Assembly (NCBI RefSeq): GCF_006345805.1
Contig: NC_043026.1
Location: forward strand, 13,123,579-13,187,578
DNA length: 64,000 nucleotides
Source: Octopus sinensis
Lineage: Eukaryota
Direction: 5' to 3'
Part shown: positions 7,567-33,302 of the stretch, one piece after another
How the letters are laid out: every line of letters starts with the position of its first letter
Numbering within the stretch: position 1 is the first letter of the stretch
Program-made: the position numbers and the translations under genes
Notes under the pieces: model-generated
Seen by the model: only the letters and a program-made list of their open reading frames with translations
The model's database searches: none
Told to the model about the DNA's origin: nothing

Positions 7567-7614
<48 letters not shown>

Positions 7615-7640
7615 TATATATATATATACATGTATATACA
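7310..7640. repeat. (TA)n and (TATC)n microsatellites
   Basis: Direct reading. Mirrored at about 26,100-26,460. Confidence 0.9.
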
Positions 7641-10820: not shown

Positions 10821-10989
10821 AGACATTCATTCACAACACCCTTATATACGAGAGCAGTTTAACATACACTTGACCGTCATTTTACATTGAAATTGATTTG
10901 TCCTTGGAAACCGAAACTGCGTTGCGATTACAAAGCTGAAGTGGTCCCAAACACATCCTGTAATGTCATAGACCCAATGGATGATGTCA

Positions 10990-11200
10990 GTTCGAAGTGT
11001 TTCCTCAGTGTTATCCGGGGAATCGATTTACAGGAGAACACTCAGACGATAGAGGACATGCAACAAGTTCCGGACAGAATGGTAGAGCAAATTGTGGCTT
11101 TCATAATGGAACGTGTGTGTTCTGGGGCCCATTATATTTACAGAGAAGTGCACCAGTTACTATATAATCTCCAAAGGCATCGCTTTATTCAGGCCACTTG
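10990..11200 (+). mobile_element. Highly diverged fragment homologous to the start of the RTE-like segment at 27,760
   Basis: Visible alignment of CCGGGGAATCGATTTACAGGAGAAC...CAAGTTCCGGAC with CCGGGGAGTTGATTTACACGAGAGC...CAGGTTCCAGAC. Mirror copy at about 22,450-22,660. Confidence 0.55.
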
Positions 11201-11384
11201 AAGTACTTTGATGGGTTAATACAATGAATTAAAATGAAATAATTTAAGAGAGAATTTATTTCGATATAGAATTTCAGTTTTTGCTTTCGTAGGAAATCTG
11301 TTTTTGTTTTATTCGCAATACTCGCGCGTACACTCACACTTAGCCGGAAGACAGACAGACAGACAGACATACACACGAACATAC

Positions 11385-11655
11385 ATGTATGTGTGTAGTA
11401 TGTGTGTGTGTATGTATGTATGTATGTATGTATGTATGTATGTATGTATGTATGTATGTATGTAGGATGTATGTATGTATGTATGTATGTATGTATGTAT
11501 GTATGTATGTATGTATGTCTGTATGTATGTATGTATGTATGTATGTATGTATGTATGTATGTATGTATGTATGTATGTTTGTATGCATGTATATGTATGT
11601 ATGTATGTATGTTTGTATGATATGTATGTATGTATGTAGTATGTCTGTATGTATG
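11385..11655. repeat. (TATG)n microsatellite
   Basis: Direct reading. Shorter mirror at about 22,100-22,270. Confidence 0.95.
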
Positions 11656-11825
11656 GAAGAAAAAACTATTTCCACAGGTAACACCAACAGCATAAATTGA
11701 TAAATAGATAAATGTAATATTTTCAGCTAAATAATTGCTAATATGATTACAAATTGATATTGGTTTAATAAATACTCTAATTTTGCAAGATGCCTAACTA
11801 AACCCATTCCTAGCATGAATTTTAT

Positions 11826-12925
11826 TAAGAACACCTGTGCTTTTTTTTAAAAACACCCCCTGCCTTTATTAGAACACCTGTGTCTTTATTAAGAACACCT
11901 GTGTCTTTATTAAGAACAGATGTGCCTTTATTAAGAACAAACGTGCCTTTATTAAGAACACCTGTGTCCTTCCTTATTAAGAACACCTGTGTCTTTTTAA
12001 GAACACCTGTGTCTTTATTAAGAACAGATGTGCCTTTTTAGAACAAACGTGCCTTTATTAAGAACACTGGTCCTTATTAAGAACACCTGTGTCTTTATTA
12101 AGAACACCTGTGTCCTTATTAAGAACACCTGTGTCTTTATTAAGAACATCTGCATCTTTTAAGAACACCTGTGCCTTTATTAAGAACACACCTGTGTCTT
12201 TATAAAGAACAAATGTACCTTTATTAAGAAACACCTCTGCCATTATTAAGAACACCTGTGTCTTTATTAAGAACACCTGTGTCTTTATTAAGAACAGATG
12301 TGCCTTTATTAGAACAAATGTGCCTATTAAGAACACCCGTGTCCTTATTAAGAACACCTGTGCCTTTATTAAGAACATCTGTGTCTTTATTAAGAACAAA
12401 TGTGCCTTTATTAAGAACACCTGTGTCCTTATTAAGAACACCTGTGTCTTTATTAAGAACACCTGTGTCCTTATTAAGAACACCTGTGTCTTTATTAAGA
12501 ACATCTGCATCTTTATTAAGAACACCTGTGCCTTTATTAAGAACACCTGTGTCTTTATAAAGAACAAATGTACCTTTATTAAGAACACCTCTGCATTTAT
12601 TAAGAACACCTCTGCATTTATTAAGAACACCTGTGTCTTTATTAAGAACACCTGGTGTCTTTATTAAGAACAGATGTGCCTTTATTAGAACAAATGTGCC
12701 TTTATTAAGAACACCCGTGTCCTTATTAAGAACACCTGTGCCTTATTAAGAACACTCTGTGTCTTTATTAAGAACAAATGTGCCTTTATTAAGAACACCT
12801 GTGTCCTTATTAAGAACACCTGTGTCTTTATTAAGAACACCTGTGTCCTTATTAAGAACACCTGTGTCTTTATTAAGAACATCTGCATCTTTATTAAGAA
12901 CACCTCTGCATTTATTAAGAACACC
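11826..12925. repeat. 21-bp minisatellite (TTTATTAAGAACACCTGTGTC)n, about 52 copies
   Basis: Continuous tandem monomers with no spacers. 7-aa period in overlapping pseudo-ORFs. Confidence 0.95.
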
Positions 12926-12980
12926 AGTTATATTCTAAATTTCAAAATAATTCTACACTCTGAAACTTGAACTAACAATT

Positions 12981-13110
12981 AAACAAGTCCAGAAGTTAGG
13001 TTAAATATAGATACAAGCAGAAGTACCATGAATTCCCTTTCTATAAACTGGCAAACAGTTCTGTGAATGCTTCACGGCCAACGCCGGGTATTAAGTCTAG
13101 TATGCAACTA
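12981..13110 (+). mobile_element. Helitron-like 3' end fragment
   Basis: GC hairpin (CCGGC-CAAC-GCCGG in the mirror copy) followed by CTAG|T. Absent from paralogous modules at about 8,730 and 16,070. Confidence 0.55.
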
Positions 13111-13299
13111 AATGCGTACAATATTAATATGGATACTTTCGTAAAACGCTGGATTCGTAAAACATTGTCTGCGAAAGAGAAATTGATTTATTTTTCTTTT
13201 CTCACAGCATTGTATTATTTCAGCAGCATTCCGTAAAGTTCTTTTTTTTCAGTTCTCCTGCTATTTTTTTACTCTCCTGTAAAATCTTCAATGATATTT

Positions 13300-13548
13300 T
13301 AGTTAGTTAGTTAATTTTTTGGCTCAAAAAGAAAAAGCAAGGCATGTAGGGGGACATGGAGTTATGTACAGGGTGGTGCTCATGCAAAGAGTTCAGGCCA
13401 TTTCTGGTCAAGGGAGCCTTTGAACCGAGCGGTCGTCGGCATCTTCACTATCTCGTCCGGCAGCTTATTCCACGGATCCGCAACCCCGGACGGAGAAAAA
13501 GCCCTCTCCTTCGATTCAGATTCAGCATGAAATCATCGCAGATAGAGC
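13300..13548 (-). mobile_element. CR1-clade LINE 3' fragment
   Basis: Minus strand SVRVADPWNKLPDEIVKMPTTARFK..LDQKWPELF plus 3' UTR ending in (TAAC)n. Same family as 49,652-50,150. Confidence 0.8.
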
Positions 13549-13968
13549 TGTTTGTCTGTTATTAACACAAAGTCCCTGAAATGACGACGAAATATAAATG
13601 TATCAGCTTTTATGTTAGTTTTTAAGGTCTTAAAATATTTCAAGCTTGAAGAATGGCTTCTCATGTATTTCCGTTCGACTGCAACGCCATCTTTCGATGA
13701 CGTTTTCAATCTTGTGATTTCCGTATCGTTTTCTTGCAGCTGATTGTTCGGCAATTTCCGTAAGTAATTTCTTTCATTTTCATCATTCATGTCCTGTTCA
13801 ATTCGAGTTTGCTTTGATGTCGGTGAGGGAGGCAAAATGAGATATTGAGGCTAGCAATCACTACACGTATATACTCATACACACACACGATCAAACACAC
13901 GTACACACGTACACACACACACGTGCACTTGTATCACACACTCGTTACGTGTATATGAAATACAATTG

Positions 13969-14126
13969 GTGAGTGGCTGTGTGGTAAGTAGCTTGCTTAC
14001 CAACCACTGGTTCCGGGTTCAGTCCCACTGCGTGGCATCATGGGCAAGTGACTTCTGCTATAACCCCGGGCCGACCAATGCCTTGTGAGTGGATTGGTAG
14101 ACGGAAACTGAAAGAAGCCTGTCGTA

Positions 14127-14172
<46 letters not shown>

Positions 14173-14399
14173 TATATATATGTGTGTGTGTGTGTGTGGT
14201 GTGTGTGTGTGTTTGTGTTGTCCCCTAGCATTGCTTGACAACCGATGCTGGTGTGTTTACGTCCCCGTAACTTAGCGGTTCGGCGAAAGAGACCGATAGA
14301 ATAAGTACTGGACTACAAAGAATAAGTCCCGGGGTCGATTGCTGACTAAAGGCGGTGCTCCAGCATGGCCGCAGTCAAATGACTAAACAAGTAAAGAGT
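13969..14399 (+). mobile_element. tRNA-derived SINE, family A (TGGGCAAGT core, internal (TA)n, GGCGGTGCTCCAGCATGGCC 3' region)
   Basis: A/B-box-like head (TGGCTGTGTGG...GGTTCAGTCCC). At least 8 related copies in the window. Confidence 0.85.
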
Positions 14400-14915: not shown

Positions 14916-14956
14916 CGGAACTAAGTTCAGCTCATCACATTCTTACATTGACTACC

Positions 14957-15676
14957 ATGGACACTGAAAGCGCAAACATTGGGACAAGCGATCAGCCCAA
15001 TTCACCAACTAAGAAAGATCTTAGTAAATGTTTCGCTAAATATGATATGGAAAATAAAACACGTGTAGCTTATATAGTCGACCCTAAGTGTTCAACAAAC
15101 GATGCAGCAGATTTTAGAAGGGCATTAGAACGTATTGGATTTAAATGTGAACCTATTTATAACGATTTTGAAACAATGTGCAAAGATTTGGAAAAGTTTA
15201 AGGAAACTGAACGTAAAAATAAAATTGGTTGCTTTATTTGTGCAGTTATAAACCAAGATCACGAGAAAGCTGGATCTGACGTAATTGCACTAACTTCTAA
15301 GCTGACAGCCGATAAGTGTCAATCTTTAAAAGGAGTTCCTAAATTAATTTTTATTGAAGCAGTTGAAATAGTTGGAAGATTCCACGCAGTGGATGCACCT
15401 GAAACAGGCAATATACTTAAAATCCCAATAACGGCAGATCTGTTGGTTTTTCGTTCGTGGCGGAAAGAATGTCTGCCAATCCACGGCAAACATGAAGCTT
15501 CGCCATTTATGAAAATATTAACCGAAAATTTGAATGAGTATGGCACTAAATATGAAATCCTGAAACTATTAACCATTACTTCTGGTGAATTCCAAAGTTC
15601 GGAGAATTCGAAAAATAATGGCTCTGAAAGAAAGACTCAGATTGCGTCGACATTGCTCAAAGAACTAATGTTTTGA
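14957..15676 (+). CDS. Catalytically dead caspase homologue (pseudo-caspase C), 239 aa, intact ORF
   Basis: N-terminus GTSDQPNSPTKKDLSKCFAKYD matches A/B. GCFICAVINQD replaces SHG and KLIFIEAVE replaces QACRG. DLLVFRS and QIASTLLKELMF retained. No stops or frameshifts; ACTACCATGG start. Confidence 0.82.
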   Translation: MDTESANIGTSDQPNSPTKKDLSKCFAKYDMENKTRVAYIVDPKCSTNDAADFRRALERIGFKCEPIYNDFETMCKDLEKFKETERKNKIGCFICAVINQDHEKAGSDVIALTSKLTADKCQSLKGVPKLIFIEAVEIVGRFHAVDAPETGNILKIPITADLLVFRSWRKECLPIHGKHEASPFMKILTENLNEYGTKYEILKLLTITSGEFQSSENSKNNGSERKTQIASTLLKELMF

Positions 15677-18951: not shown

Positions 18952-19184
18952 GTTTGACTGCGGCCATGCTGGAGCACCCGCCTCTAGTCGAGCAAATCGA
19001 CACCACGACTATTTTTGTAAGCCTAGTACTTATTCTATCGGTCTCTTTCGCCGAACCGCTAAGTTACGGGGACGTAACACACCAGCATCGTTTGTCAAGC
19101 AATGCTAGGGGGACAAACACAGACACAAACACAGACACGCATATATTATATATATTATATATTATAATATATATATATATATAT

Positions 19185-19222
<38 letters not shown>

Positions 19223-19453
19223 ATATATTATATATGTATATATGTAGGTCCCGGGTTGAGTCGGGGTTAACCACAGTAAATAAGGTACTCAATACATAGC
19301 AGAGTAAATTAATTTATTATATAGAAGCTTTGGTGATGGTTATAAGGGCACTGGGGTGTGCTAGGATATGTAGGTCCCGGGTTGAGTCGGGGTTAACCAC
19401 AGTAAATAAGGTACTCAATACATAGCAGAGTAAATTACTTTATTATATAATAA

Positions 19454-19486
<33 letters not shown>

Positions 19487-19509
19487 TATATATATATATA
19501 TATAATATA

Positions 19510-19565
<56 letters not shown>

Positions 19566-19695
19566 CATATATACGACAGGCTTCTTTGAGTTTCCGTCTA
19601 CCAAATCCACTCACAAGGCATTGGTCGGCCCGGGGTTATAGCAGAAGACACTTGCCCATGATGAACCCAGAACCATGTGGTTGGTTAGCCACTCA
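18952..19695 (-). mobile_element. SINE family A (mirror of 13,969-14,378) with extra insertion in its (TA)n tract
   Basis: Reverse complement of the left copy, 3' tail truncated. Contains a 126-bp duplicated insert at 19,243-19,450. Confidence 0.8.
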
Positions 19696-20124
19696 CCATT
19701 ATATTTCATATACACGTAACGAGTGGTGATACAAGTGCACGTGTGTGTGTGTGTGTGTTTGTGTGTGTACATGTGTTTGATCGTGTGTGTGTGTGAGTAT
19801 ATACGTGTAGTGATTGCTAGACTTAATATCTCATTTTGCCTCCCTCACTGACATCAAAGCAAACTCGAATTGAACAGGACATGAAATGATGGAAAATGAA
19901 TAGAAATTACTTACGGAAATTGCCGAACAATCAGCTGCAAGAAAACGATACGGAAATCACAAGATTGAAAACGTCATCGAAAGATGGCGTTGCAGTCGAA
20001 CGGAAATACATGAGAAGCCTTTCTTCAAGCTTGAAATATTTAAGACCATAAAACTAACATAAAAGCTGATACATTTTATTATTTCGTCATCATTTCAGGG
20101 ACTTTGTGTTAATAACAGACAAAC

Positions 20125-20372
20125 AGCTCTATCTGCGACAATTTCATCTGAATCGAAGGAGAGGGGGCTTTCTCCGTCCGGGTTGCGGATCCGTGGAATA
20201 AGCTGCCGGACGAGATAGTGAAGATGCCGACGACCGCTCGGTTCAAAGCCTCCCTTGACCAGAAATGGCCTGAACTCTTTGCATAAACACCACCCTGTAC
20301 ATAACTCCATGTCCCCCTACATGGCCTTGCTTTTTTGCTTTTTGAGCCAAAAAATTAACTAACTAACTAAAA
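20125..20372 (+). mobile_element. CR1 LINE 3' fragment (mirror copy)
   Basis: Reverse complement of 13,300-13,548. Confidence 0.8.
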
Positions 20373-20747
20373 TATCATTGAGAGATTTTCCAGGAGAGTA
20401 AAAAATAGCAGGAGAACTGAAAAAAAAAAGAACTTTACGGAATGCTGCTGACATAATACAATGCTGTGAGAAAAGAAAAATAAATCAATTTCTCTTTCGC
20501 AGACAATGTTTTACGAATCCAGCGTTTTACGAAAGTATCCATATTAATATTGTACGCATTTAGTTGCATACTAGACTTAATACCCGGCGTTGGCCGGTGA
20601 AGCATTCACAGAACTGTTTGCCAGTTTATAGAAAGGGAATTCATGGTACTTCTGCATTGTATATATATTTAACCTAACTTCTGGACTTGTTTAATTGTTA
20701 GTTCAAGTTTCAGAGTGAAGAATTATTTTGAAATTTAGAATATAACT

Positions 20748-21940
20748 GGTGTTCTTAATAAAGGCACAGTTGTTCTTAATAAAGGCACAAGTGTTCTTAA
20801 TAAAGGCACAGGTGTTCTTAATAAAGGCACAGGTGTTCTTAATAAAGGCACAGGTGTTCTTAATAAAGACACAGGTGTTCTTAATAAGGACACAGGTGTT
20901 CTTAATAAAGACACAGGTGTTCTTAATAAAGGCACAAGTGTTCTTAATAAAGGCACAGGTGTTCTTAATAAAGGCACAGGTGTTCTTAATAAAGGCACAG
21001 GTGTTCTTAATAAAGACACAGGTGTTCTTAATAAGGACACAGGTGTTCTTAATAAAGACACAGGTGTTCTTAATAAAGGCACAAGTGTTCTTAATAAAGG
21101 CACAGGTGTTCTTAATAAAGGCACAGGTGTTCTTAATAAAGGCACAGGTGTTCTTAATAAAGACACAGGTGTTCTTAATAAGGACACAGGTGTTCTTAAT
21201 AAAGACACAGGTGTTCTTAATAAGTTCTTAATAAAGGCACATTTGTTCTTAATAAAGGCACATTTGTTCTTAATAAAGACACAGATGTTCTTATAAAGGC
21301 ACAGGGTTTCTTAATAAGGACACGGGTGTTCTTAATAAGACAGATGTTCTTAATAAAGACACAGGTGTTCTTAATAAGGACACAGGTGTTCTTAATAAGA
21401 CACAGGTGTTCTTAATAAGGACCATTGTTCTTAATAAAGGCACATTTGTTCTTAATAAAGGCACATTTGTTCTTAATAAAGACACAGGTGTTCTTAATAA
21501 GGCACAGGTGTTCTTAATAAGGACACAGGTGTTCTTAATAAAGGCACATCTGTTCTTAATAAAGACACAGGTGTTCTTAGTAAAGACACAGGTGTTCTTA
21601 ATAAATGCAGAGGTGTTCTTAATAAAGGCACAGGTGTTCTTAATAAAGGCACATTTGTTCTTTATAAAGACACAGGTGTTCTTAATAAAGGCACAGGTGT
21701 TCTTAATAAAGATGCAGATGATCTTAATAAAGACACGGGTGTTCTTAATAAGGACACAGGTGTTCTTAATAAAGACACAGGTGTTCTTAATAAGGACACA
21801 GGTGTTCTTAATAAAGGCACATTTGTTCTTAATAAAGGCACAGGTGTTCTTAATAAAGACACAGGTGTTCTTAATAAAGGCACAGGTGTTCTAATTAAGG
21901 CAGGGGTGTTTTTAATAAAGGCACAGGTATTCTTAATAAA
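20748..21940. repeat. 21-bp minisatellite, about 57 copies, with 147-bp higher-order repeat
   Basis: Variant AAAGGCACAAGTG recurs at 20,781, 20,928 and 21,075. Confidence 0.95.
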
Positions 21941-22829
21941 ATTCATGCTAGGAAATGGGTTTAGTTAGGCATCTTGCAAAATTAGAGGATATTTATTAAA
22001 CCAATATCAATTTGTAATCATTTTAGCAATTATTTAGCTGAAAATATTACATTTATCTATTTATCAATTTATGCTGTTGGTGTTACCTGTGGAAATAGAT
22101 TTTTCTTCCATACATACAGACATACATACATACATACATACATACATACAAACATACATACATACATACAAACATACATACATACATACAAACATACATA
22201 CATACACACATACATACATACATACATACATGCATGCATACACACACACATACATACACACATACATGTATGTTCGTGTGTTTGTCTGTCTGTCTGTCTG
22301 TCTTCCGGCTAAGTGTGAGTGTACGCGCGAGTATTTGCGAAATAAAACAAAAACAGATTTCCTACGAAAGCAAAAACTGAAATTCTATATCGAAATAAAT
22401 TCTCTCTTAAATTATTTTAATTTTAATTCATTGTATTAACCCATCAAAGTACTTCAAGTGGCCTGAATAAAGCGATGCCTTTGGAGATTATATAGTAAAC
22501 TGGTGCACTTCTCTGTAAATATATGGGCCCCAGAACACACACGTTCATTATGAAAGCCACAATTTGCTCTACCATTCTGTCCGGAACTTGTTGCATGTCC
22601 TCTATCGTCTGAGTGTTCTCCTGTAAATCGATCCCCTGGAAAACACTGAGGAAACACTTCGAACTGACATCATCCATTGGGTCTATGACATTACAGGATG
22701 TGTTTGGGACCACTTCAGCTTTGTAATCGCAACGCATTTCGGATTCCAAGGACAAATCAATTTCAATGTAAAATGACGGTCAAGTGTATGTTAAACTGCT
22801 CTCGTATATAAGGGTGTTGTGAATGAATG

Positions 22830-23880
22830 TCTGTGTGTGTGTGTATGTGTGTGTGAGTGTGTGTATGTCTGTGTGTGTGTGCGTGAGTGTGTATGCCTGT
22901 GTGTGTATATATGAGTGTGTGCGTGTAGTGTGTGTGCGTGTGGTGTGTGTGTTTGTGTGTGCGTGAGTGTGTGTGCCTTTGTGTGTATGTATGAGTGTGT
23001 GCGTGTGGTGTTTGTGTTTGTGTGTGTGCGTGAGTGTGTATGCCTGTGTGTGTATATATGAGTGTGTGCGTGTGGTGTGTGTGTGTTTGTGTGTGTGCGT
23101 GAGTGTGTATGCCTGTGTGTGTATATATGAGTGTGTGCGTGTGGTGTGTGTGCGTGTGGTGTGTGTTTGTGTGTGTGCGTGTGGTGTGTATGTATGAGTG
23201 TGTGCGTGTGGTGTGTGTATTTGTGTGTGTGCGTGAGTGTGTATGTATGAGTGTGTGCGTGTGGTGTGTGTATTTGTGTGTGTGCGTGAGTGTGTATGTA
23301 TGAGTGTGTGCGTGTGGTGTGTGTATTTGTGTGTGTGCCTGTGTGTGTATGTATGAGTGTGTGCGTGTGGTGTGTGTATTTGTGTGTGTGCGTGAGTGTG
23401 TATGTATGAGTGTGTGCGTGTGGTGTGTGTATTTGTGTGTGTGCCTGTGTGTGTATGTATGAGTGTGTGCGTGTGGTGTGTGTATTTGTGTGTGTGCGTG
23501 AGTGTGTATGTATGAGTGTGTGCGTGTGGTGTGTGTGTTTGTGTGTGCGTGAGTGTGTATGCCTTTGTGTGTATGTATGAGTGTGTGCGTGTGGTGTGTG
23601 TGTTTGTGTGTGCGTGAGTGTGTATTCCTGTGTGTGTATATATGAGTGTGTGCGTGTGGTGTGTGTGTGTGAGTGTGTATGCCTGTGTGTGTATGTATGA
23701 GTGTGTGCGTGTGTGTGTATATATGAGTGTGTGCGTGAATGTGTATGCCTGTGTGTGTATATATAAGTGTGTGCGTGTTGTATATATGAGTGTGTGCATG
23801 TGGTGTGTGTGTTTGTGTTTGTGCGTGAGTGTGTATGCCTGTGTGTGTATTGTGGAGTGTGTGCGTGTGGCGTGTGTGTT
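22830..23880. repeat. GT-derived minisatellite (mirror position of 9,850-10,820, different unit mix)
   Basis: Units GTGTGTGCGTGAGTGTGTATG... with variable internal motifs. Confidence 0.85.
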
Positions 23881-25439
23881 TGTGTTTGTATGAAATCTTC
23901 GTAGTTTTCTAGTCGAATTCTCCTGGGAGGGATTTGGAGATCTTTGCCGAAATTAATCGAATGAATTTTAAAAAAGGTGTATTTAGGGCGAAGAAACAAT
24001 ATTTCAGCTTTTATTTCTTCCATATCCACATTTCCAGTGAGGGATTCATATTTTGCTTCCACATTTCTTCTACGTTCGTACTTTACTTCTACGCAGGCGC
24101 AAAGCAACACATCCAATCCGTCTAACAAAAGGAGTTTTTCTACTTTTGGAAAGAAGGAAATTATATGAGAAGCAACTTAGGGTCTTTTTTCTGGAAGTTT
24201 GAAACTAAAAGAATAAATCTTCCGGATTCTATCTCCGTGTCTGTAGACGTAGTTTAAACAAAACCCCTCTTTCAAAAATTGTAAAATAAAAAAACTTTTG
24301 GGTGGGAAGGAAGAAATTTTTATTTTGGAAAATTTCTTTTTGTCTTTTTTTTTGGCAAAATCGTAATCTTCCATAACTAAAACATCGGAAAGAGTAAGAA
24401 ATAAATGAAAAGGAATATGGATTTGGGGTTAGGGTAAAACCGCCGAAATTTGAAACAGAAAGGATTTCATAAAAACATATCCGGAGGCTGAACTCATAAG
24501 TAAGATGGTTAAACGTTCAGATGCGAGGTGTCCGAAAAAGATAAAATGCCTTTCCTTCAGTTGTCGGCAATTTCCGTAACGAACTACTTACGGAAATTGT
24601 CGAGCAATTAGACGCAAGGAAAGGACAAGATTGAACCCATAATGGAAACATTGCGCTGCAGGCAAAGAAATTTACAGAAGTTTTCATTCACACTTTACAT
24701 ATCTAAATAAATTAAGAACTAACGAAAAAGCTGATACATTTTGATATTTCATTGGCAATTCAGAGACTTCCACATTTATAAGAGAAATTTTATTAGGAGA
24801 TTATCCACAAGAATTTAACAAGAATAGCAGAATAATTGAAAAAAATATTACGCAATGGTGATGAGATAGTTTAATGCAGTGAGAGAAGAAAGATAAAAAA
24901 TTTCTCTTTGGCAGAGAAACTGTTACGAATCCAGCGATATAGGAAAATACATGAATAAAATAGCCTAGATATTAATATTGTTCATATTTAGTTGTATATA
25001 AAAACAATGTTGGTTCAATTTTCAGAATGTAGGATTATTTTGTAATTAGAATGGACCTATAAGTCACTGGTGTTCTTTAGTAAAATTTACGGGAGGAAAT
25101 AGTTTTAGTGAAGCAGCACCTTAAAATGTTAGGGGATATTTATTTAACGAAAATCAATATGTAGGTTATATTATTCCTGTGCTCTCATACATCGCTGGAT
25201 TAGTAAAACATTGTCTGCGAAACAGAGATTGTTTTACTTTGTTTTCTCACTGCATTGTACTTTCTGGGCATCATTGCGTAACGTTTCTTCAATTCTTTGG
25301 GTATTTGTTTCACTCCGGAGGATAATCTCTGGAGGATAATCTCTGAAATGACAACGAAATAATACCATGTATTAGCTTTTACGTCTGTCCTTCGTGTATC
25401 GCGGAATTGCACAAATAAAGCAATCAAAAACGATTTCAA

Positions 25440-25930
25440 GATTATCTTGCTCAAATTCTTTCATCAAACGGAGATGTTCAAAGGGCTTGAGAAAATCGTG
25501 ATTTCAAGATGATGACCTCAGATTTTATACAGATTCAGAAGTCAAACATTTGTTCGACTGTTACATCTGTATAAAAGCTGAGGTCCTCTTTTTAAATCCT
25601 CGTCTTTGATGAAAGAATTTGAGGAAGATCATCCTGTTATCATTATTGATTGCTTTATTTGTGCAATTCTGTATCATGGGGCAGAAAACGATGTTATATA
25701 TGGATACGACGATGAAGTGAAGCTAGATGCGTTGCTTTCTTGCCCGGGACTCGATTGCTGTCCATCATTATAGGGAATAATTAAATTAATCTTTAGTCAA
25801 GCTGGTCGTGAGATTAAGAAATCGATGCTGGTAGATCCGGATTAAAACTATCTTGCCTCTTTTGAATTCCAATTCAAAATATAATGGCTGTAAGCGAATG
25901 CCTCAGATTATATCAACCTTGCTCAAAAAC
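25440..25930 (+). pseudogene. Caspase pseudogene (right-arm copy)
   Basis: IDCFICAILYHG (CAT GGG 25,675-80), TAG at 25,771, QAGRE at 25,798, MPQIISTLLK at about 25,898. Same lesions as the left copy. Confidence 0.8.
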
Positions 25931-26132
25931 CAAAATTTTGAGAGAGGAAGTAAATATTTCTGGTGTGGGACCCTTAAATAGATATGGAACTTCTTACGGT
26001 GAGAATTTCTGACGCATCTGCATATTGTACGAAAAGAATATGGTTTAGAAACACACACATCCAGAGATGCAACGGAGTAGATTTTAAAACCTCATGTATA
26101 TACATGTATATATATATATATATGTATATATA

Positions 26133-26212
<80 letters not shown>

Positions 26213-26214
26213 AC

Positions 26215-26285
<71 letters not shown>

Positions 26286-27739
26286 TAGATATAGATATAT
26301 ATATAATAAACCTTTACATAAATAAATAACGTGAAATACACGAAGGGACGAACATAAGAGACAGACGGGTCATTCAAAGCCTTCGTTCTTCAGTCAGAAA
26401 CCGATTCCTCATCGCAGATTTCGATACATATATATATACATATATATATATACATATATATAACATGACTATTTCCACAGGTAACACCAACAGCATAAAT
26501 GATAAATAGATAAATGTAATATTTTCAGCTAAATAATTGCTAAAATGATCATGAACGTGATACTTAACTAAAAGTATTTCTCAGCATGAATTTTTATTAA
26601 GAACACCTGTGCCTTTATTAAGAACACCTGTGCCTTATAGTTAAATTCTAAATTTCAAAAGGATCTGGTGTGTGTGTTTGTGTGTGTGTGTGTATGTGCG
26701 TGTGTCTATCTGTGTACGATTGCGCACGCGCCCTCCATTCTATTCCACCTTTCACCCACCTCACTGATTTCGAAGCAAATGTCACCTTCAACACGACATG
26801 AAACGAGAAAGTAAATATATAAAACTTCGTGACGGAAATTACCGAAGATTTAGACCCTCAACGAAACATTGCCGAATTTTTAAATTCCAAATACTGAAAG
26901 AAAGACTCTTTACGGATATTTTGCACCGTGCATCTGACCGTTTAACCCTCTTACCTATGAGGGCAGCCTTCAGATATATTTTCGTGTGACCCTTTTTTGA
27001 TTCAAATATCGGCGCAATTCGGTTGTACCCCTATCTCAACTCTCTCTATTTTTCAAAAATTCTCAGGCATTCCTATTTTTTGTTATCGAGGATTATGATT
27101 TGGGGTAACAGTTTTTTATTTTACTTTTTGCTTAATCAACGGAGATTTCGAATGTGAAAGATAGATTTTTTCAATTTTAAACTTTCAGAAAGAAAGATCC
27201 AATGTCATTCCTCCTACATTTTTCTTCTTACAAAAACTAAGAAATTCCGAATGTTGTACATATTGAACATGTGTCTTTGCGCCCGCGTAGATTTCGCCCG
27301 AACAGAAGATGAAAAATATGGACCCCTCAAAGAAAATTCAACATGCTAGAAATAACAGCTAAATGAGGGGAAAATCGTTTTTCTGCGGCATAACCACATG
27401 TTACTTTTAAGTCATTGGATTAATCCCAGCAAAATACTCCAAGTTTAATCCCTGGCCAGACCCATCCCAGCACGATCCCACTTAAGAAAACCAAACAGGT
27501 TTCACACAACACACAACCAAGCACGCACACACACACACACACTTCCACACACAACACATACACACATGTACGATCGCGTTTATCATGCAATTGACCGTCA
27601 TTTTTACAGGAAAGTAAATTGTCCTTGGAAAATGAAACTGTTTTGAAATACAAAGCTAAGTGGCACTAAAGAAATGCTGAAATGTCATACGTACAATATA
27701 TGATGTCATTGTCGTCTGCGTCATCGCCGTGGACGACGC

Positions 27740-29095
27740 CATCTTAGAAAGCATTTAGTGCTGTTTATCAATGTTTTCCGGGGAGTTGATTTACACGAGA
27801 GCCCTCAGAAGATAGGAAGGCTGCAACAGGTTCCAGACTGGATGCTAGACACAGCCGAGGCGTTCGTAATGGAAAGTGTAGAACTGGGGTCCAATATATT
27901 TACAGACGAGTGATCCAGTTACCACAATTTCCAAACACTTGTCTTTATTGACGCCATTGTGAAATACTCTCGTACCTTTATAAACCCACGGAGTGGTGTA
28001 TGTAGAAATCTTGTGGACCCGTATGGGACACGAATAAAAATGAGATAAAAGCGAAAGTTGAGATTGAGCGGGGATTTGAGATGATTGCATGGAGATGAGG
28101 CCATTACTGGCGAGCTGTTGACGAAGATCATTCTCAACCGGCTGAAAAGACATCTCAGAGCAGGTCTTACCAGAGAATCAATGTGGCACCGGGTGAGGGA
28201 GATGAACGATGGACACAATCTTCACACAGACACAGTTATGGGAGAAATACTTTAGTAAGTGCTGGAGAAGGTTGTTGACATCGCGGGGATGGAAGGACTC
28301 GCCTTGGTTGGCGGAGATTTAGGGAATCGTTTGCAGTCAACCACGGTGAGAAGTAGTGGTGCGTGTTATCCAAGCTTTCTTGTATGTTTGCGTCCAGATG
28401 TGTTGCACCATGATGGTCAACTAGCAAAAGGGCGATTTCAACCGTACTAGAATAGATGGGAAGCCCTTCAGCCTGGCTCAACTTCGTACTTACACCAAAA
28501 TCAGGGAAATGCGTTCAGGGTGCTGCCCTCGGCAGACAATTCAGTGTTCTACCAGATTCCACCAAGTTGCCATATTATATCGAGGGCTCCAGAGCATTTG
28601 AGGTAGACTGAGGGCTTTATCCCTGGACAGTGCTTTGACTTGTATTAACATTTCTGACTTGGAAGTTAAGTGGTGAATACAGTCTGCCAGAAAGGCTTTT
28701 GCCTCCTTTGAGAAGCATCTACGGAGATTCCTTGGCAGTGACCACAAAATGCAAGCGAAATTGTAAGGTGCAGTGCTCACTTGCCTCAACTATTCAACGG
28801 AATGCGTTGCTCTTGACCACCGACATATCAAAGCCCTGCCTGAGCCCTAATGTGGAGGCCCTGCGCTGCACTGTCGCGGTTAGTATGAAGGCCCTCTTCA
28901 CCTTATTGCGTCTCGGCTGGGCATGACATGTTTGCAGTAGGAAGAGTGAAAGTTTACGTAAGGCAGATTTTGTTTTATGGTAAAAGGCATCAGGGCAGGT
29001 GAAGCCGTGGTGGCCAGGGGATGAGCTGGAGATAGATGTGTAGAACTCTGGAATCTCCCTCAGGACCCTGAAAGGAGAGGGTCCCGGCGGTGCAA
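27740..29095 (+). mobile_element. Degenerate RTE-clade LINE fragment (mirror copy)
   Basis: Reverse complement of 4,665-6,030 with a small arm-specific deletion of about 30 bp near 28,605. Confidence 0.75.
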
Positions 29096-29212
29096 TTGAT
29101 GGCACCGTATTTTGAAGCTCAAAATTCCGGCCATTGAGGAGTAAAAATGCAGAAATATTTTGCGCGCGGTCGTGTCTATGTGTGTGTGTGTGTGTGTGTG
29201 GTTTGTTTGTAA

Positions 29213-29245
<33 letters not shown>

Positions 29246-29512
29246 TAAGTGTGTAAGTGTGTGTGTGGTGTGTGTGTATGTGTGTGTGTAACATTGTGTA
29301 TGTGCCCGAGCGTGTTCTGTTTTATGTATTTGTATTCACAACACACACACACACACACCATACACCACACACACACACACACATTCACAGCCATTTCTCG
29401 CACATACACCTAAATACATTCATGCATTCTGCGAGGGAGGGTTTCAATATTCAACTCATCCACAATAAAAGTCAGTGGTTGTATGTGTACGTGTGTGTGT
29501 ATGTGTGTGTAC

Positions 29513-29545
<33 letters not shown>

Positions 29546-29762
29546 TGTGTGTATGTATGTATGTATGTATGCATGTATGTATGTGTGTGTATGTGTGTGT
29601 GTAGTGTGTGTGTATGTGTGTGTGAGTGTGGTGGTGTATGTGTGTATGTATGTATGTAGTATGCATGTATGCATGTATGTATGTGTGTGGTGACTGTGTG
29701 TGTATGTGTATGTGTACGTGCGTGTATATGTGTGTGTGTATGTGTGTGTGTATGTGTGTGTG

Positions 29763-29802
<40 letters not shown>

Positions 29803-30185
29803 CGTGTGTGTGTGAATGGTTGCGCACGCACTCTTCGGTGTGGTTCACTTTTCCCCTCCCTCAACGATTTCTAAGCAAATGTCGCCTACAAAATGACGTA
29901 AATAAAATAAAGAAATAAAAATTTCCTTACGGAAATTGCCGAAGATTTAAACCATCAACGAAACATTGCCGAAATTTTAAATGCCAAATAAGGGAAGAAA
30001 GACATTCTATCGATATCATCGAACACCGTGCATCTGAACGTTTAACCCTCTCGCCTATGAGTTCAGCCCTCAGTTTTCGTGTAACCCTTAAGGTGTGGAG
30101 TCCTTAAGAAACGCAGATTATTACGGTGAGAATTTCTGATGCATTTGTATATTTTGAGTTGGAAGCGAGGAGTTGGATTTCGTTA

Positions 30186-30235
30186 ACGCATGCGCATTGA
30201 TAGCAATTTGAGAGGACAGAAATAATATATAATAA
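30186..30235 (+). promoter_or_regulatory. Putative caspase B proximal promoter
   Basis: ACGCATGCGCA at 30,186-30,196 and TATATAA at about 30,226. Confidence 0.5.
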
Positions 30236-30277
30236 ACGGAACCAGGTTCTGCTCATCACGTTCTTACATCGACTACC

Positions 30278-31255
30278 ATGGCAGATGGAGGTGAAAACGT
30301 TGGGACAAGCGATCAGCCCCATTCCCCAACTAAGGAAGATCTTAGTAAACGTTTCGCTAAATATGATATAAATAACAAGCGACTTGTAGCCTACATCTTC
30401 AACCACGAAAATTTCAAAAATAACCATCCTGAATCTCGTGAAGGCTCATCAAAAGATACAGAAGCTTTTATAGCGGCATTAATAAAACTTGGATTTTCTG
30501 AACGGGATGTCACAGTTTTTAAAGATAAAACAGCCGATGAAATGCTCAATGCTTTCAAAAATGTTAACGAAGTTGGAACTCGTAATCCAGTTGGTTGCTT
30601 TGTTTGTGCAATTATGAGCCATGGTAGGGAAAACGATCAGTTATGTGCATACGACCGCGATGTTGGACTGTATGATTTGCTTTCTTGCCTGACACCCGTT
30701 AAATGTCCATCTTTAAGTGGAGTACCCAAATTAATTTTTGTTCAAGCATGTCGTGGAGGAGAGATTGATGAAGGATTCTGTGTAACTGATGGCCCTGAAA
30801 CAGAAGTGAATGAAACGCTATCCAATATTCCAATTATGCCTGATCTGTTGGTTTTTCATTCCTCCTATAATAAATATTCGTCTTTCAGGAATAAACCGAA
30901 TGGTACGTGTTTTATGAAAACATTAAGTGAAGCTTTGATTGAATATGGCACTGAACGTGAACTCCTGACACTTTTAACCGCTGTCTCTTACTATGTTGCT
31001 TCTTCAGAATTCAAAACTTATCGCAATCCCGAACTGGAGAAGAAACAAATGCCTCAGATTATGTCGACATTGCTCAAACAGCTAAAGTTTGAACCGAGGA
31101 GGGAAAATGCTTCATCAAAAGCACGTACGCGAAGCAGAAGTCCACTTGAGGAAACGGATGGGAGTTCAAAGAAGCGCCCGCGCAAGCCGACATTAATACG
31201 CACAACTCCAGGAACATACAAATACACATACATAACACAGTCACATGCACAGTAA
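30278..31255 (+). CDS. Effector-type caspase, copy B, 325 aa, intronless
   Basis: SHG (30,617-30,625), QACRG (30,743-30,757), VTD/G linker. Basic tail RTRSRSP...SKKRPRKP. Confidence 0.92.
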   Translation: MADGGENVGTSDQPHSPTKEDLSKRFAKYDINNKRLVAYIFNHENFKNNHPESREGSSKDTEAFIAALIKLGFSERDVTVFKDKTADEMLNAFKNVNEVGTRNPVGCFVCAIMSHGRENDQLCAYDRDVGLYDLLSCLTPVKCPSLSGVPKLIFVQACRGGEIDEGFCVTDGPETEVNETLSNIPIMPDLLVFHSSYNKYSSFRNKPNGTCFMKTLSEALIEYGTERELLTLLTAVSYYVASSEFKTYRNPELEKKQMPQIMSTLLKQLKFEPRRENASSKARTRSRSPLEETDGSSKKRPRKPTLIRTTPGTYKYTYITQSHAQ

Positions 31256-31259
31256 TGTA

Positions 31260-31921
31260 GAAACACACCACACACACCACATGCACACATACGCACACAT
31301 ACACTCACGCACACAGACAACCACGCACACGCACACACACACACACGCACACATACGCACACACATGCACACACACACACATACGCACACACATGCACAC
31401 ACACACACATACGCACACACATGCACACATACGCACACACATGCACACATACGCACACACACACACACACACGCACACATGCACTCACACGCAGACCCAA
31501 CATACATGCACACACACACGTACACACCACACATACGCACAAACACGCACACACGCACAAACACACACACATATGCACACATACGCACACACACATACGC
31601 ACCACATGCACACACACACACATACGCACACACATGCACACACACACACACACGCAACACACACACACATAGCACACATACGCCACACACGCTCCGCAAC
31701 AACACACACACATACACATACGCACACATACGTCACACACACGCACACACACACATACACATACGCACCACACGAACACACGCACAACACACACATACGC
31801 ACACATACGCACACAACGCACACGCACACACACACACACACATACACACACGCACACACACACACACATACACACGCACACGCACAAACACACACATACG
31901 CACACATACGCACACACACGC

Positions 31922-31957
<36 letters not shown>

Positions 31958-31987
31958 ATACGGACACACACACACACACACACACAT
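31260..31987. repeat. Compound (CA)n microsatellite
   Basis: Mirror of 1,799-2,770 with a different length. Confidence 0.95.
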
Positions 31988-32346
31988 GCTAGCCCGCGTT
32001 GAACGTCGTATAAGAATGAAGGTAAATTGATCTTCGAAACATGGAATGGTTCTGCGATTCAAACCAGAAGTGACACTAAAAACATCCATTAATATCATAT
32101 ACAGAATATAAAATGCCAGAATTTTCTTTTTGTATATCAATATACAGAATATCAGATGTCGTAATCCGGAATAGATCGCTGGAACAAAACCCCCAGCGTA
32201 TGATGACATAACTGAAAGAGCTAAAGATTGAACCGTGAGAATATCTTCTTACGTGAGAATATCCTTTCGATGTGAATATTACACTAAAAGAATATATTTT
32301 TGGAACTTATGCATTTACAAGAGAAGATATTTTATGAATTCGTACA

Positions 32347-32757
32347 TACTCTTTACTCTCTTTTTACTCTTTCTCTTTACTCTTTTAGTTGTTTCAGTCA
32401 TTTTACTGCGGCCATGCTGGAGCAACCGCCTTTAGTCGAGCAAATCGACCCGGGACTTATCTTTGTAAGCCCAGTACTTATTCTATCGGTCTCTTTTGCC
32501 GAACCGCTAAGTTACGGGGACGTAAACACACCAGCATCGGTTGTTAAGCAATGCTAGGGGGACAAACACAGACACACACAAAACACACACATACATACAT
32601 ATATATATACATATATACGACAGGCTTCTTTCAGTTTTCCGTCTACCAAATCCACTCACAAGGCTTTGGTTCGGCCCGAGGCTATAGCGAAGACACTTGC
32701 CCAGATGCCACGCAGTGGGACTGAACCGGAACCATGTGGTTGGTAAACAAGCTACTT
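32347..32757 (-). mobile_element. SINE family A, right-arm specific
   Basis: Near-full-length minus-strand copy located where the left arm has about 700-1,431. Confidence 0.85.
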
Positions 32758-33064
32758 GGCTTTATTGAGAAAATTCTATAGTTTGTAAGATATTGTTTGT
32801 TTTTTTCTTCAATTTCTGCAATTTTCAACCATCAATGACGTCTATTGAGCTAAAAAAACATTCTGGCCGTATGAATATGTCCCTCCTTTAAGAAACAGAT
32901 TGGATTATTTCATTTGTGAACAAAAAAGATACCCTCCCCCTACCCCTACCCTAACCCTAAAACTAAAACGATTGAAATGTAATAGATCGATACTAGGGTC
33001 ATAATTATGGGTGACAGTTTCATATAACCCGCTAGAAAAAATGCCGTTCAAACAGAAAAGATCC
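32758..33064 (-). mobile_element. Truncated mirror of the 367-806 MITE
   Basis: Ends CAAACAGAAAAGATCC|CAGAAATA. Other end removed at the SINE junction. Confidence 0.8.
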
Positions 33065-33302
33065 CAGAAATATCATATAATAAGATGTTTCACTAACGCT
33101 ATTTCCTAACGTAAATTTCCAAGAACTCCAGTGCCTTCTAGGAACATTCTAAATTTCAATACTCTTCACACTCTGAATATTGACTAACATTCTTTTATAT
33201 ACAATATGAACAATATTAATATGCGCGCCATTTTATTTCATCGCTTTTCATATACCGCTGCATTCGTAAAATTTTCTCTGCCGAAGAGAAATTGTTTTTT
33301 TC

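What the first reader, a model, noticed from the sequence alone, without database searches (positions are those of the whole stretch)
31091..31255. Paralogues with opposite localisation tails: Cys-rich CaaX-like end in A, NLS-like end in B
Seen: over 11 aligned codons, eight single-base changes, all non-synonymous, convert B's ARTRSRSPLEE... into A's GCTLCICPLG-stop (GAA to TAA). B continues into SKKRPRKP. Known: short K/R clusters act as monopartite NLSs. A terminal C-x-x-x with upstream cysteines is the prenylation-plus-palmitoylation pattern of H/N-Ras, although CPLG is a non-canonical CaaX. Inference: one copy is nuclear and the other membrane-anchored or metal/redox-binding, i.e. subfunctionalisation by address.
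Basis: partly seen in the sequence, partly recalled or inferred. Interest (0 to 1): 0.75.

Follow-up and report, generated by a model that had tools for sequence, protein, structure and literature searches.

The report
Young caspase tail truncated in one copy
Two recently duplicated octopus caspase genes end differently because one copy gained a tight cluster of eight mutations, including a new stop codon, in a young, disordered tail made from former 3'-untranslated sequence; a difference in cell location is possible but unproven, and the "lipid anchor" reading is weak.

Summary
A (3748..2879, minus strand, 289 aa) and B (30278..31255, plus strand, 325 aa) are intronless caspase-3/7-like genes of Octopus sinensis. 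They lie in the two arms of a ~14 kb inverted duplication. Eight substitutions in 30 bp, all non-synonymous, turn ARTRSRSPLEE into GCTLCICPLG-stop. B reads on into KKRPRKP.

- **Direction:** the O. vulgaris orthologue and two further O. sinensis copies carry the B-type tail, so all eight changes arose on A's lineage. The clustering is significant (0 of 200,000 permutations).
- **Origin of the tail:** it lies beyond the caspase fold and is predicted disordered. Other family members lack it. It appears to come from loss of the ancestral stop (TAA to GAA). The O. bimaculoides orthologue shows no DNA homology there.
- **Cysteines:** six of the eight changes are to T, turning Arg/Ser codons into Cys codons. 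The Cys-richness is probably a by-product.
- **Motifs:** CPLG is not a canonical CaaX box, and Cys at -4 occurs in 5.5% of arbitrary frame ends here. KKRPRK does fit the NLS consensus (about 1% by chance).
- **Splicing:** the O. vulgaris gene model splices the tail out, at a donor inside the cluster.

"Subfunctionalisation by address" is not shown. The most likely story is turnover of a young, dispensable tail, with possible loss of a nuclear import signal in A.

The parts
30278..31255 (+). Copy B: intronless caspase-3/7-like gene, 325 aa. It is an annotated NCBI protein of Octopus sinensis.
   Evidence: ORF; Pfam Peptidase_C14 at residues 37-269, E=1.5e-44; exact sequence found in the protein collection as P0033.
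2879..3748 (-). Copy A: intronless caspase-3/7-like gene, 289 aa, 90% identical to B.
   Evidence: Pfam Peptidase_C14 at residues 37-267, E=5.9e-44; annotated on CM016888.1 of GCA_006345805.1.
30386..31084 (+). Caspase domain of B. SHG is at 30617..30625, QACRG at 30743..30757, and the linker Asp within CVTD|G at 30779..30793.
   Evidence: PDB caspase matches end at query residues 271-277. D171 is invariant in 23 homologues.
2948..3640 (-). Caspase domain of A, with SHG (3412..3404) and QACRG (3286..3272) intact.
31103..31105 (+). GAA codon in B (2929..2927 in A) at the position of the ancestral stop. Everything after it is the young extension.
   Evidence: The neighbouring paralogue reads GAA GCG AAG AAA TAA AAT ATT TCA where A and B read GAA CCG AGG AGG GAA AAT GCT TCA. 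Twelve of the 23 aligned homologues end three or four residues after ...LKF (such as EPRR/EPRN/EPKK), and three more end within two residues of it.
31121..31153 (+). B side of the 8-substitution cluster. It keeps the ancestral state ARTRSRSPLEE.
2879..2911 (-). A side of the cluster, in the derived state GCTLCICPLG plus TAA (stop codon at 2881..2879).
31125..31130 (+). Splice-donor-like GT inside the cluster: CAC|GTACGC in B and GAT|GTACGC in A (2907..2902). In O. vulgaris, C and C2 it is CAC|GTAAGC, and the O. vulgaris model uses it as a donor.
31148..31162 (+). EETD|G in B's tail. It resembles the gene's own linker site CVTD|G, but this is a motif resemblance only.
   Evidence: inference.
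31169..31189 (+). KKRPRKP basic cluster (NLS-like), translated in B.
2843..2863 (-). The same KKRPRKP codons in A. They now lie downstream of the new stop and are not translated.
31190..31255 (+). Last 21 codons of B plus its stop. They run into a CA microsatellite (31256 to about 31980). In O. vulgaris the unspliced frame already stops after KPT, and in C and C2 the end is frameshifted.
129..14380 (.). Left arm of the inverted duplication, carrying A.
   Evidence: Self-BLAST.
18953..33300 (.). Right arm of the inverted duplication, carrying B.
   Evidence: Self-BLAST.

Best explanation
A and B are young paralogues of an octopus-specific, intronless caspase-3/7-like gene family. They sit in the two arms of an inverted duplication in Octopus sinensis.

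The family's proteins normally end a few residues after the last strand of the caspase fold (...LKFEPRR-stop). In the common ancestor of the O. vulgaris and O. sinensis copies, that stop was lost (TAA to GAA). The reading frame then ran on into former 3'-UTR. This added a disordered extension of 30-50 residues that happens to contain an Arg/Ser stretch, an EETD|G motif and a KKRPRK basic cluster. B keeps this ancestral extension.

After the split from O. vulgaris (about 2.5 My ago), copy A picked up a tight patch of eight substitutions, six of them to T. The patch turned Arg/Ser codons into Cys/Leu/Ile codons and GAA into TAA. That cut the extension to 14 residues and left the basic cluster untranslated.

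What is shown: the anatomy, the direction of change, the clustering and the young age of the tail. What is inferred: the tail is largely dispensable, the Cys-richness and the 'CxxX' ending are by-products of the mutation patch rather than a new lipid-anchor signal, and the only likely functional effect is that A lost a possible nuclear import signal that B-type copies retain.
For: - **Family and fold limits:** Pfam Peptidase_C14 ends at residue 269 in B and 267 in A. PDB caspase matches end at residues 271-277. AlphaFold pLDDT is below 50 for B residues 277-325 and A residues 275-289.
- **Extension is lineage-specific:** 12 of the 23 aligned homologues end three or four residues after ...LKF. 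The O. bimaculoides orthologue has an unrelated A-rich tail with no DNA homology.
- **Stop loss:** the neighbouring paralogue has TAA where A and B have GAA, followed by homologous AAT-NNT-TCA.
- **Polarity:** O. vulgaris, C and C2 all carry the B-type bases at all eight sites.
- **Clustering:** 8 of A's 17 private changes fall in 30 bp, with 0 of 200,000 permutations reaching this.
- **Mutation spectrum:** C>G, C>T, G>T, A>T, G>T, A>T, A>G and G>T. CGT, AGC and AGT became TGT, TGC and TGT.
- **Chance levels:** Cys at -4 in 5.5% of arbitrary frame ends, canonical CaaX in 0.27%, and a K/R cluster in 0.9% of pieces.
- **Recent stop:** A's post-stop frame is still open and nearly identical to B.
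- **Divergence times:** 2.5 My (O. vulgaris/O. sinensis) and 34 My (O. bimaculoides), from PMC10700109.
Against: - A neutral account does not explain why eight changes fall in one 30-bp patch. They fall in four pairs, each hitting codon position 2 and the next codon's position 1.
- No donor sequence for a gene-conversion or templated event was found in the window or in six related loci.
- The whole gene group shows an excess of non-synonymous private changes (A 16:1, O. vulgaris 15:0, B 7:0). Positive selection on the tail therefore cannot be excluded.
- KKRPRK is unusual by chance (0.9%) and is unchanged in all five copies. However, they are too closely related for that conservation to carry weight.
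- No expression, splicing or localisation data were available.
Confidence: 0.55

Rival explanations
1. B is sent to the nucleus by KKRPRK. A is prenylated at CPLG and palmitoylated at the upstream cysteines, or binds metal through C-x-x-C-x-C. The two paralogues have thus divided localisation between them.
For: The tails differ as described. KRPR fits the NLS consensus. A has Cys at -4 with two Cys upstream and L at a2. [quoted passage not shown] A's lineage also gained a fourth Cys, Y238C. Non-synonymous changes are in excess overall.
Against: CPLG is non-canonical: P at a1 was absent from the enriched Ydj1 set in PMC10320760, and G is not a preferred X residue. Cys at -4 is common by chance (5.5%). 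The Cys residues follow from the T-biased patch. The A-type tail is unique to one copy of one species. AlphaFold shows no confident packing of the tail. The ancestor had no lipid signal, so this would be gain plus loss, not subfunctionalisation. The tail itself is young and non-conserved.
Confidence: 0.06
2. A half-version of the reader's model. The B-type tail is a working nuclear import signal, possibly removable by caspase cleavage at EETD|G. A is simply a natural loss-of-NLS variant, and its cysteines have no role.
For: KKRPRK is rare by chance (0.9%) and sits in a disordered, exposed tail. The ancestral form in C, C2 and O. vulgaris also fits the bipartite pattern KR-x12-KKRPR. EETD|G resembles the gene's own linker site CVTD|G at the invariant Asp171. 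A's stop lies just upstream of this motif.
Against: The tail is recent 3'-UTR-derived sequence and is missing from all other family members. B itself has lost the upstream KR (K to T). The O. vulgaris model splices the NLS-like part out. There is no functional evidence. The motifs were found after the fact.
Confidence: 0.2
3. The tail is mostly not translated. The main transcripts are spliced from the donor inside the cluster to a small terminal exon 2.4-3.1 kb downstream, as annotated in O. vulgaris (...SSKA-LDICFEVGGEGKDGNRR). On this view both 'tails' are intron sequence, free to drift.
For: The O. vulgaris model CAI9742739.1 uses AAAGCAC|GTAAGC and the acceptor TTTTCTTAAAG|. That annotation pipeline used Iso-Seq, RNA-seq and PASA (PMC10700109). 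The exon-2 homologue, with its acceptor, is 98-99% conserved downstream of A and of C. No AATAAA or ATTAAA lies within about 1.5 kb (A) or about 2.4 kb (B) downstream of the stop codons.
Against: A and B have the weaker donor GTACG, and A also changed positions -3 and -1. No exon-2 homologue was found in the window downstream of B. RefSeq models for A, B, C and C2 are unspliced. It is unknown whether the O. vulgaris junction has read support or is ab initio.
Confidence: 0.17
4. The eight-base patch is not a series of point mutations in this gene. It was either copied by gene conversion from a paralogue not sampled here, or introduced during assembly polishing by reads from such a paralogue.
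For: The gene group is a mosaic. Site patterns (A,Ov | B,C,C2) and (A,B | Ov,C,C2) alternate along the gene. The other dense patch (30416..30435, KNNHPES versus NKDSLY) is shared with the neighbouring gene. The region is a multi-copy inverted duplication in a PacBio/Illumina assembly.
Against: No sequence within 3-4 mismatches of the derived 19-22-mers exists in the window or in loci L001-L006, apart from B's own ancestral-type homologue, which scores exactly 4 mismatches. No annotated O. sinensis protein has an A-like tail. The flanks of the patch are A-specific and continuous.
Confidence: 0.1

Closest known systems
Effector caspases (caspase-3/-7/-6; Spodoptera Sf-caspase-1), MEROPS family C14A
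   Same: Peptidase_C14 domain, SHG and QACRG catalytic motifs, a short prodomain, a linker Asp, and a fold ending at ...LKF. The best PDB matches are Sf-caspase-1 (1m72, E=3.7e-34) and human caspase-7.
   Different: These genes are intronless and locally duplicated in an inverted repeat. They carry a 14-50-residue disordered C-terminal extension that solved caspases and the other octopus paralogues lack.
C-terminal extension by stop-codon loss (read-through into former 3'-UTR)
   Same: A paralogue keeps TAA at the homologous codon, and the first bases after it are still alignable. The extension is disordered, varies in length between close relatives, and runs into a microsatellite.
   Different: In one copy the extension was shortened again by a new stop 14 codons later. 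That stop arose inside a significant cluster of eight substitutions.
Classical importin-alpha-dependent NLS (monopartite K-K/R-X-K/R; bipartite KR-x10-12-basic)
   Same: B has KKRPRK, which contains KRPR. C, C2 and O. vulgaris also fit the bipartite pattern.
   Different: This is a motif match only. It sits on a caspase, in recently non-coding sequence, and no import has been tested.
CaaX box with upstream palmitoyl cysteines (H-Ras/N-Ras type)
   Same: Cys at -4, L at a2, and two further Cys 2 and 5 residues upstream.
   Different: a1 is Pro and X is Gly, so it is not canonical. It is not conserved in any relative, and it arose from T-biased substitutions.

Membership tests
Caspase (Pfam PF00656 Peptidase_C14, clan CD) | Significant match to the caspase domain profile over its full length | tested here: met
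   B: E=1.5e-44, profile positions 3-232 of 233. A: E=5.9e-44. There are 123 PDB caspase sequences at E<=1e-10.
Caspase (Pfam PF00656 Peptidase_C14, clan CD) | Catalytic dyad: His in SHG and Cys in QACRG | tested here: met
   B has SHG at 114-116 and QACRG at 156-160. A has them at 113-115 and 155-159. H and C are nearly invariant in the alignment.
Caspase (Pfam PF00656 Peptidase_C14, clan CD) | Effector type: short prodomain, no CARD or DED | tested here: met
   Only Peptidase_C14 was found. About 36 residues precede the domain.
Caspase (Pfam PF00656 Peptidase_C14, clan CD) | Asp-specific proteolytic activity | not testable with these tools
   Needs an enzyme assay.
Classical NLS | Monopartite consensus K-K/R-X-K/R in an exposed segment | tested here: met
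   KRPR within KKRPRK (B residues 298-303). The tail has pLDDT below 50. At least 5 K/R in 6 occurs in 0.9% of arbitrary 50-residue pieces.
Classical NLS | Bipartite consensus (K/R)(K/R)-x10-12-(at least 3 of 5 basic) | tested here: not met
   Not met in B (ARTRSRS...). Met in C, C2 and the unspliced O. vulgaris frame (ARKRSRS...KKRPR).
Classical NLS | Importin binding or nuclear accumulation of a reporter | not testable with these tools
   Needs an experiment.
CaaX prenylation motif | Cys exactly four residues from the C-terminus | tested here: met
   A ends C286-P-L-G289 followed by the stop. The same holds for 5.5% of arbitrary frame ends in this window.
CaaX prenylation motif | Aliphatic a1 and a2; X is S/M/Q/A/C (FTase) or L/F (GGTase-I) | tested here: not met
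   a1=P, a2=L (acceptable), X=G. Yeast data (PMC10320760) list no restriction on G at X, but P at a1 was absent from the enriched set. CPLG was not found in the supplements held as text.
CaaX prenylation motif | Motif conserved in orthologues or paralogues | tested here: not met
   It is unique to copy A. B, C, C2 and O. vulgaris have the Arg/Ser version.
Stop-loss C-terminal extension | Relatives have a stop at the homologous codon, and the sequence after it is homologous to their 3'-UTR | tested here: met
   TAA in the neighbouring paralogue aligns with GAA in A, B and O. vulgaris, and the next ~14 bases are still similar (AAAAT..TTCA.C shared). The protein ends are shown.

The most novel reading that the evidence does not exclude
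The B-type tail could be a caspase-removable address label. On this reading a disordered extension born from 3'-UTR carries a working NLS (KKRPRK) just downstream of a caspase site (EETD|G), so activation would cut off the import signal. Copy A would be a natural variant in which a burst of eight mutations replaced this with a short Cys-rich end, possibly lipidated or redox-sensitive. An even more speculative variant, specific to cephalopods, is that A-to-I editing of A's UAA stop to a UGG-like (Trp) codon could restore the in-frame NLS, which is still intact behind the stop.
Probability: 0.06. Interest if true: 0.55.

Novelty: new member of a known kind. Interest (0 to 1): 0.22.

Why it matters
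If the tails really sent two near-identical caspases to different compartments, this would be a neat, very recent (under about 2.5 My) case of a protein gaining and then losing an address signal from former untranslated sequence. It would sit in a gene family that is evolving fast in octopus.

As the evidence stands, it is mainly a clean example of two ordinary processes: stop-codon loss creating a disposable C-terminal extension, and a clustered multi-nucleotide change re-truncating it. It also shows that short motif matches (CxxX, K/R clusters) in young, disordered tails should not be read as localisation signals without expression and splicing data.

The wider locus may be of more interest than the tail. 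It holds an inverted duplication of intronless caspase genes with an excess of amino-acid-changing substitutions, and a catalytically dead copy in the spacer.

Tried and rejected
- **Gene-conversion or templated origin of the cluster.** I ran fuzzy searches (up to 4 mismatches) for the derived 19-22-mers in the window and in six related loci. I also ran exact k-mer searches (8-12 nt spanning at least 2 derived sites) within about 3 kb either side of A (window 1..6500). These found only A itself, B's ancestral-type homologue, and chance-level 8-mers. Local donors are therefore rejected. Donors elsewhere in the genome could not be searched.
- **Independent evidence for the A-type tail.** A protein search with A's last 53 residues returned nothing, because of the word-index limits of the tool, so it is uninformative. 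The 90%-identity clusters of A, B and C contain only NCBI genome-derived proteins and none from transcriptomes.
- **Pairwise dN/dS between A and B.** The ratio is 1.65 for the core and 2.16 including the tail, but it is not significant (Fisher p=0.24 and 0.09). I do not claim positive selection from that test. Only the pooled excess of non-synonymous private changes is suggestive.
- **Looking up CPLG in the yeast CXXX screen.** It was not found in the supplementary files held as text.
- **Bacterial promoter/terminator scan of the region.** This is irrelevant for a eukaryotic locus and was ignored.
- **Literature on cephalopod caspases.** Nothing was found on C-terminal tails.
- **Whether the unplaced contig with C and C2 is simply the other haplotype of this locus.** Its flanks differ from both arms by about 1.5% mismatches plus many indels, so the question stays open.

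Full report
**What is there**

The window is Octopus sinensis chromosome CM016888.1 (assembly GCA_006345805.1), near 13.12 Mb. The finding lies at the 3' end of a 978-bp single-exon ORF, copy B (30278..31255, plus strand, 325 aa). B is an annotated NCBI protein. A tblastn search of B against the window finds copy A at 3748..2879 on the minus strand (289 aa, 90% identical). It also finds a more distant copy at about 14950..15676 and two mirrored fragments.

Both A and B give full-length Pfam Peptidase_C14 matches (E about 1e-44). Both keep the catalytic SHG and QACRG motifs. Their best matches among solved structures are Sf-caspase-1 and human caspase-7, -6 and -3. They are caspase-3/7-like genes with a short prodomain, the form typical of effector caspases. 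Self-BLAST shows that A and B lie in the two arms of an inverted duplication, roughly 129..14380 against 33300..18953.

**Check of the observation**

- B reads GCA CGT ACG CGA AGC AGA AGT CCA CTT GAG GAA at 31121..31153.
- A reads GGA TGT ACG CTA TGC ATA TGT CCA CTT GGG TAA at 2911..2879.
- There are eight single-base differences, all non-synonymous, and the last one creates A's stop.
- B continues through TDGSSKKRPRKP to a stop at 31255.
- In A the frame after the TAA still reads TDGNSKKRPRKPT... with only two more substitutions.

By contrast, the 440 aligned bases upstream of the start codon differ at only three positions.

**Direction and significance**

I fetched three related stretches of DNA.
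- The O. vulgaris orthologue (L002).
- Two further O. sinensis copies, C and C2. They lie in opposite orientations, roughly the same distance apart as A and B (about 25 kb against 26.5 kb), on the unplaced contig VCDQ01006033.1 (L001, L004).

At all eight sites O. vulgaris, C and C2 carry the B-type base. The A-type tail is therefore derived and the B-type tail ancestral. O. vulgaris and O. sinensis are reported to have split about 2.5 My ago (PMC10700109).

In a five-way alignment A has 17 private substitutions in 1403 ungapped sites, and eight of them fall in a single 30-bp window. None of 200,000 random placements reached eight, and a Poisson scan bound gives about 8e-6. The cluster is real and not chance.

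Its spectrum is C>G, C>T, G>T, A>T, G>T, A>T, A>G and G>T. The changes come in four pairs two bases apart, each hitting codon position 2 and the next codon's position 1. The codons CGT, AGC and AGT became TGT, TGC and TGT. The three cysteines are thus what N-to-T changes in an Arg/Ser-coding stretch would produce anyway.

I found no donor for a conversion or templated event in the window or in six loci. The cause of the patch remains unexplained.

**What the tail is**

- The Pfam domain ends at residue 269 in B and 267 in A.
- All PDB caspase alignments end at residues 271-277.
- AlphaFold models built with a 23-sequence alignment give pLDDT above 90 for the core. They give below 50 for B residues 277-325 and A residues 275-289.
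- In the alignment of 23 homologues, 12 end three or four residues after ...LKF (such as EPRR, EPRN, EPKK) and three more end within two residues of it. Only the A/B/C/O. vulgaris group and the O. bimaculoides orthologue run on much further.

At the DNA level the neighbouring paralogue reads GAA GCG AAG AAA TAA AAT ATT TCA, where A and B read GAA CCG AGG AGG GAA AAT GCT TCA. The ancestral TAA became GAA, and the frame ran into former 3'-UTR.

The O. bimaculoides orthologue split about 34 My ago. It has an unrelated A-rich tail with no DNA homology. Even among the close relatives the far end varies. The unspliced O. vulgaris frame stops after ...KKRPRKPT. C and C2 are frameshifted near the end. 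B's last 21 codons run directly into a CA microsatellite about 700 bp long.

The tail is therefore a young, disordered and variable extension.

**Splicing**

The annotated O. vulgaris protein (CAI9742739.1) does not contain the Arg/Ser or Lys/Arg part. Its model splices at AAAGCAC|GTAAGC, exactly where the cluster begins. The acceptor is TTTTCTTAAAG|, 2.45 kb downstream, and it adds LDICFEVGGEGKDGNRR. That annotation combined Iso-Seq, RNA-seq, ab initio predictions and PASA. I could not tell which kind of evidence supports this junction.

- C and C2 keep GTAAG. A and B have GTACG, and A also changed positions -3 and -1.
- The downstream exon, with its acceptor, is conserved 3.1 kb beyond A (about 207 bp outside the window start) and beyond C. 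No homologue of it was found in the window downstream of B.
- No AATAAA or ATTAAA occurs within about 1.5 kb (A) or about 2.4 kb (B) downstream of the stops.

It is therefore an open question whether the tails are translated at all.

**The two motifs**

- **K/R cluster.** KKRPRK contains KRPR, which matches the classical K-K/R-X-K/R consensus. C, C2 and O. vulgaris also match the bipartite pattern (KR-x12-KKRPR). B has lost the upstream Lys. At least 5 K/R in 6 residues occurs in 0.9% of arbitrary 50-residue open-frame pieces from this window. The NLS-like reading is reasonable as a motif match but was made after the fact.
- **CPLG.** It has Cys at -4 and Leu at a2, but Pro at a1 and Gly at X, so it is not canonical. 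Cys at -4 occurs in 5.5% of arbitrary stop-terminated peptides here, and canonical CaaX in 0.27%. [quoted passage not shown] It also reports that P at a1 was absent from the enriched Ydj1 set (PMC10320760). Prenylation cannot be excluded but nothing favours it. The motif exists in no other copy.
- **EETD|G.** I also noted that B's tail contains EETD|G (31148..31162). This resembles the gene's own linker site CVTD|G at the invariant Asp171. It is a resemblance only.

**Evolution of the gene group**

Private codon changes are almost all non-synonymous: 16:1 in A, 15:0 in O. vulgaris and 7:0 in B. Many are Glu/Lys swaps.

Pairwise dN/dS between A and B is 1.65 for the core but is not significant (Fisher p=0.24). 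Pooling the private changes in the core gives about 27 non-synonymous to 2 synonymous, against an expected synonymous share of about 22%. My own hand binomial calculation from the counts puts this near p=0.03. It was not run as a tool, and I treat it as suggestive only.

Site patterns alternate between (A,Ov | B,C,C2) and (A,B | Ov,C,C2). The other dense patch (30416..30435, KNNHPES in B against NKDSLY in A) is shared with the gene downstream of A. This indicates gene conversion among paralogues.

In long intergenic stretches the arms differ from each other by about 2.9% mismatches. Each arm differs from O. vulgaris by 1.1-1.6%. The duplication is therefore about as old as the species split or older.

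**Verdict**

A has lost a plausible NLS-like cluster that B retains. However, the CaaX reading is weak, and 'subfunctionalisation' does not fit a young tail derived from 3'-UTR. It is also uncertain whether the tail is present in the mature mRNA.

The best-supported account is turnover of a dispensable C-terminal extension: stop loss, followed by re-truncation through a clustered mutation event. The genes themselves are already annotated as caspase-7-like. The new part is a small piece of evolutionary anatomy. Interest is low to moderate.

Noticed in passing
window 129-14380 and 18953-33300: Large inverted duplication with arms of about 14 kb. The arms differ by about 2.9% mismatches plus many indels. 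They carry A and B pointing outwards, and the spacer is about 4.5 kb. The O. vulgaris locus is closer to each arm (1.1-1.6% mismatches) than the arms are to each other.
   Followed up: partly
window 14948-15676 (+): A third caspase-like ORF lies in the spacer, 42% identical to B, with a Pfam Peptidase_C14 match at E=1.3e-15. It has lost both catalytic motifs: QDH replaces SHG and EAVEI replaces QACRG. It ends at the canonical ...LMF-stop. It is either a catalytically dead pseudo-caspase or a young pseudogene with an intact frame.
   Followed up: partly
window 7929-8132 (-) and 25645-25809 (+): Mirror-image caspase fragments, one in each arm, covering the SHG-to-QACRG region. Both share the same in-frame stop (PSL*G) and read QAGR instead of QACRG. 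They are remnants of a dead caspase copy that predates the duplication.
   Followed up: no
window 30278-31090 versus 3748-2951; loci L001, L002, L004: Lineage-private changes in this gene group are almost all non-synonymous (A 16:1, O. vulgaris 15:0, B 7:0). Many are Glu/Lys swaps through G/A changes at first codon positions. This could reflect diversifying selection. In a coleoid it could also relate to A-to-I recoding of Lys codons. Neither was tested.
   Followed up: partly
window 30416-30435 (B) versus 3608-3594 (A); L006 12777-13601: A second dense patch of differences, including a 3-bp indel, gives KNNHPES in B, C and C2 against NKDSLY in A and NKHSLY in O. vulgaris. The B-type version (KNNRPES) also occurs in the caspase gene downstream of A. 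This points to gene conversion between paralogues.
   Followed up: partly
L001 and L004 (unplaced contig VCDQ01006033.1, 33.8 kb): A second pair of copies in opposite orientations, C and C2 (XP_029654380.2 and XP_029654382.2), both with B-type tails. They are spaced about 25 kb apart, against 26.5 kb for A and B. This is either a divergent haplotype of the same palindrome or a further duplication. The flanks differ from both arms by about 1.5%.
   Followed up: partly
window 30278-31255, 2879-3748, 14948-15676; L002 10121-10942; L005 4001-4924; L006 12777-13601: Every member of this octopus caspase group that I examined is a single uninterrupted ORF. This raises the possibility that the family started from a retrocopy and then spread by local duplication.
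   Followed up: no
window 11821-12928 and 20745-21940: Long minisatellite arrays, one in each arm. Self-BLAST offsets step by about 21 bp and the units are 84-92% alike.
   Followed up: no
window 46445-47763: Tandem array with a period of about 131 bp and copies about 97% identical, inferred from self-BLAST offsets.
   Followed up: no
window 35328-35427: An assembly gap of 100 N, flanked by CA-rich microsatellite. It lies just beyond the outer end of the right arm.
   Followed up: no
window 31256-31980 and about 29130-29830; also 1430-2770: CA/CACG-type microsatellites hundreds of bases long directly abut both ends of the caspase genes. They generate long spurious His/Thr- or Cys/Val-rich ORFs on both strands.
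   Followed up: no
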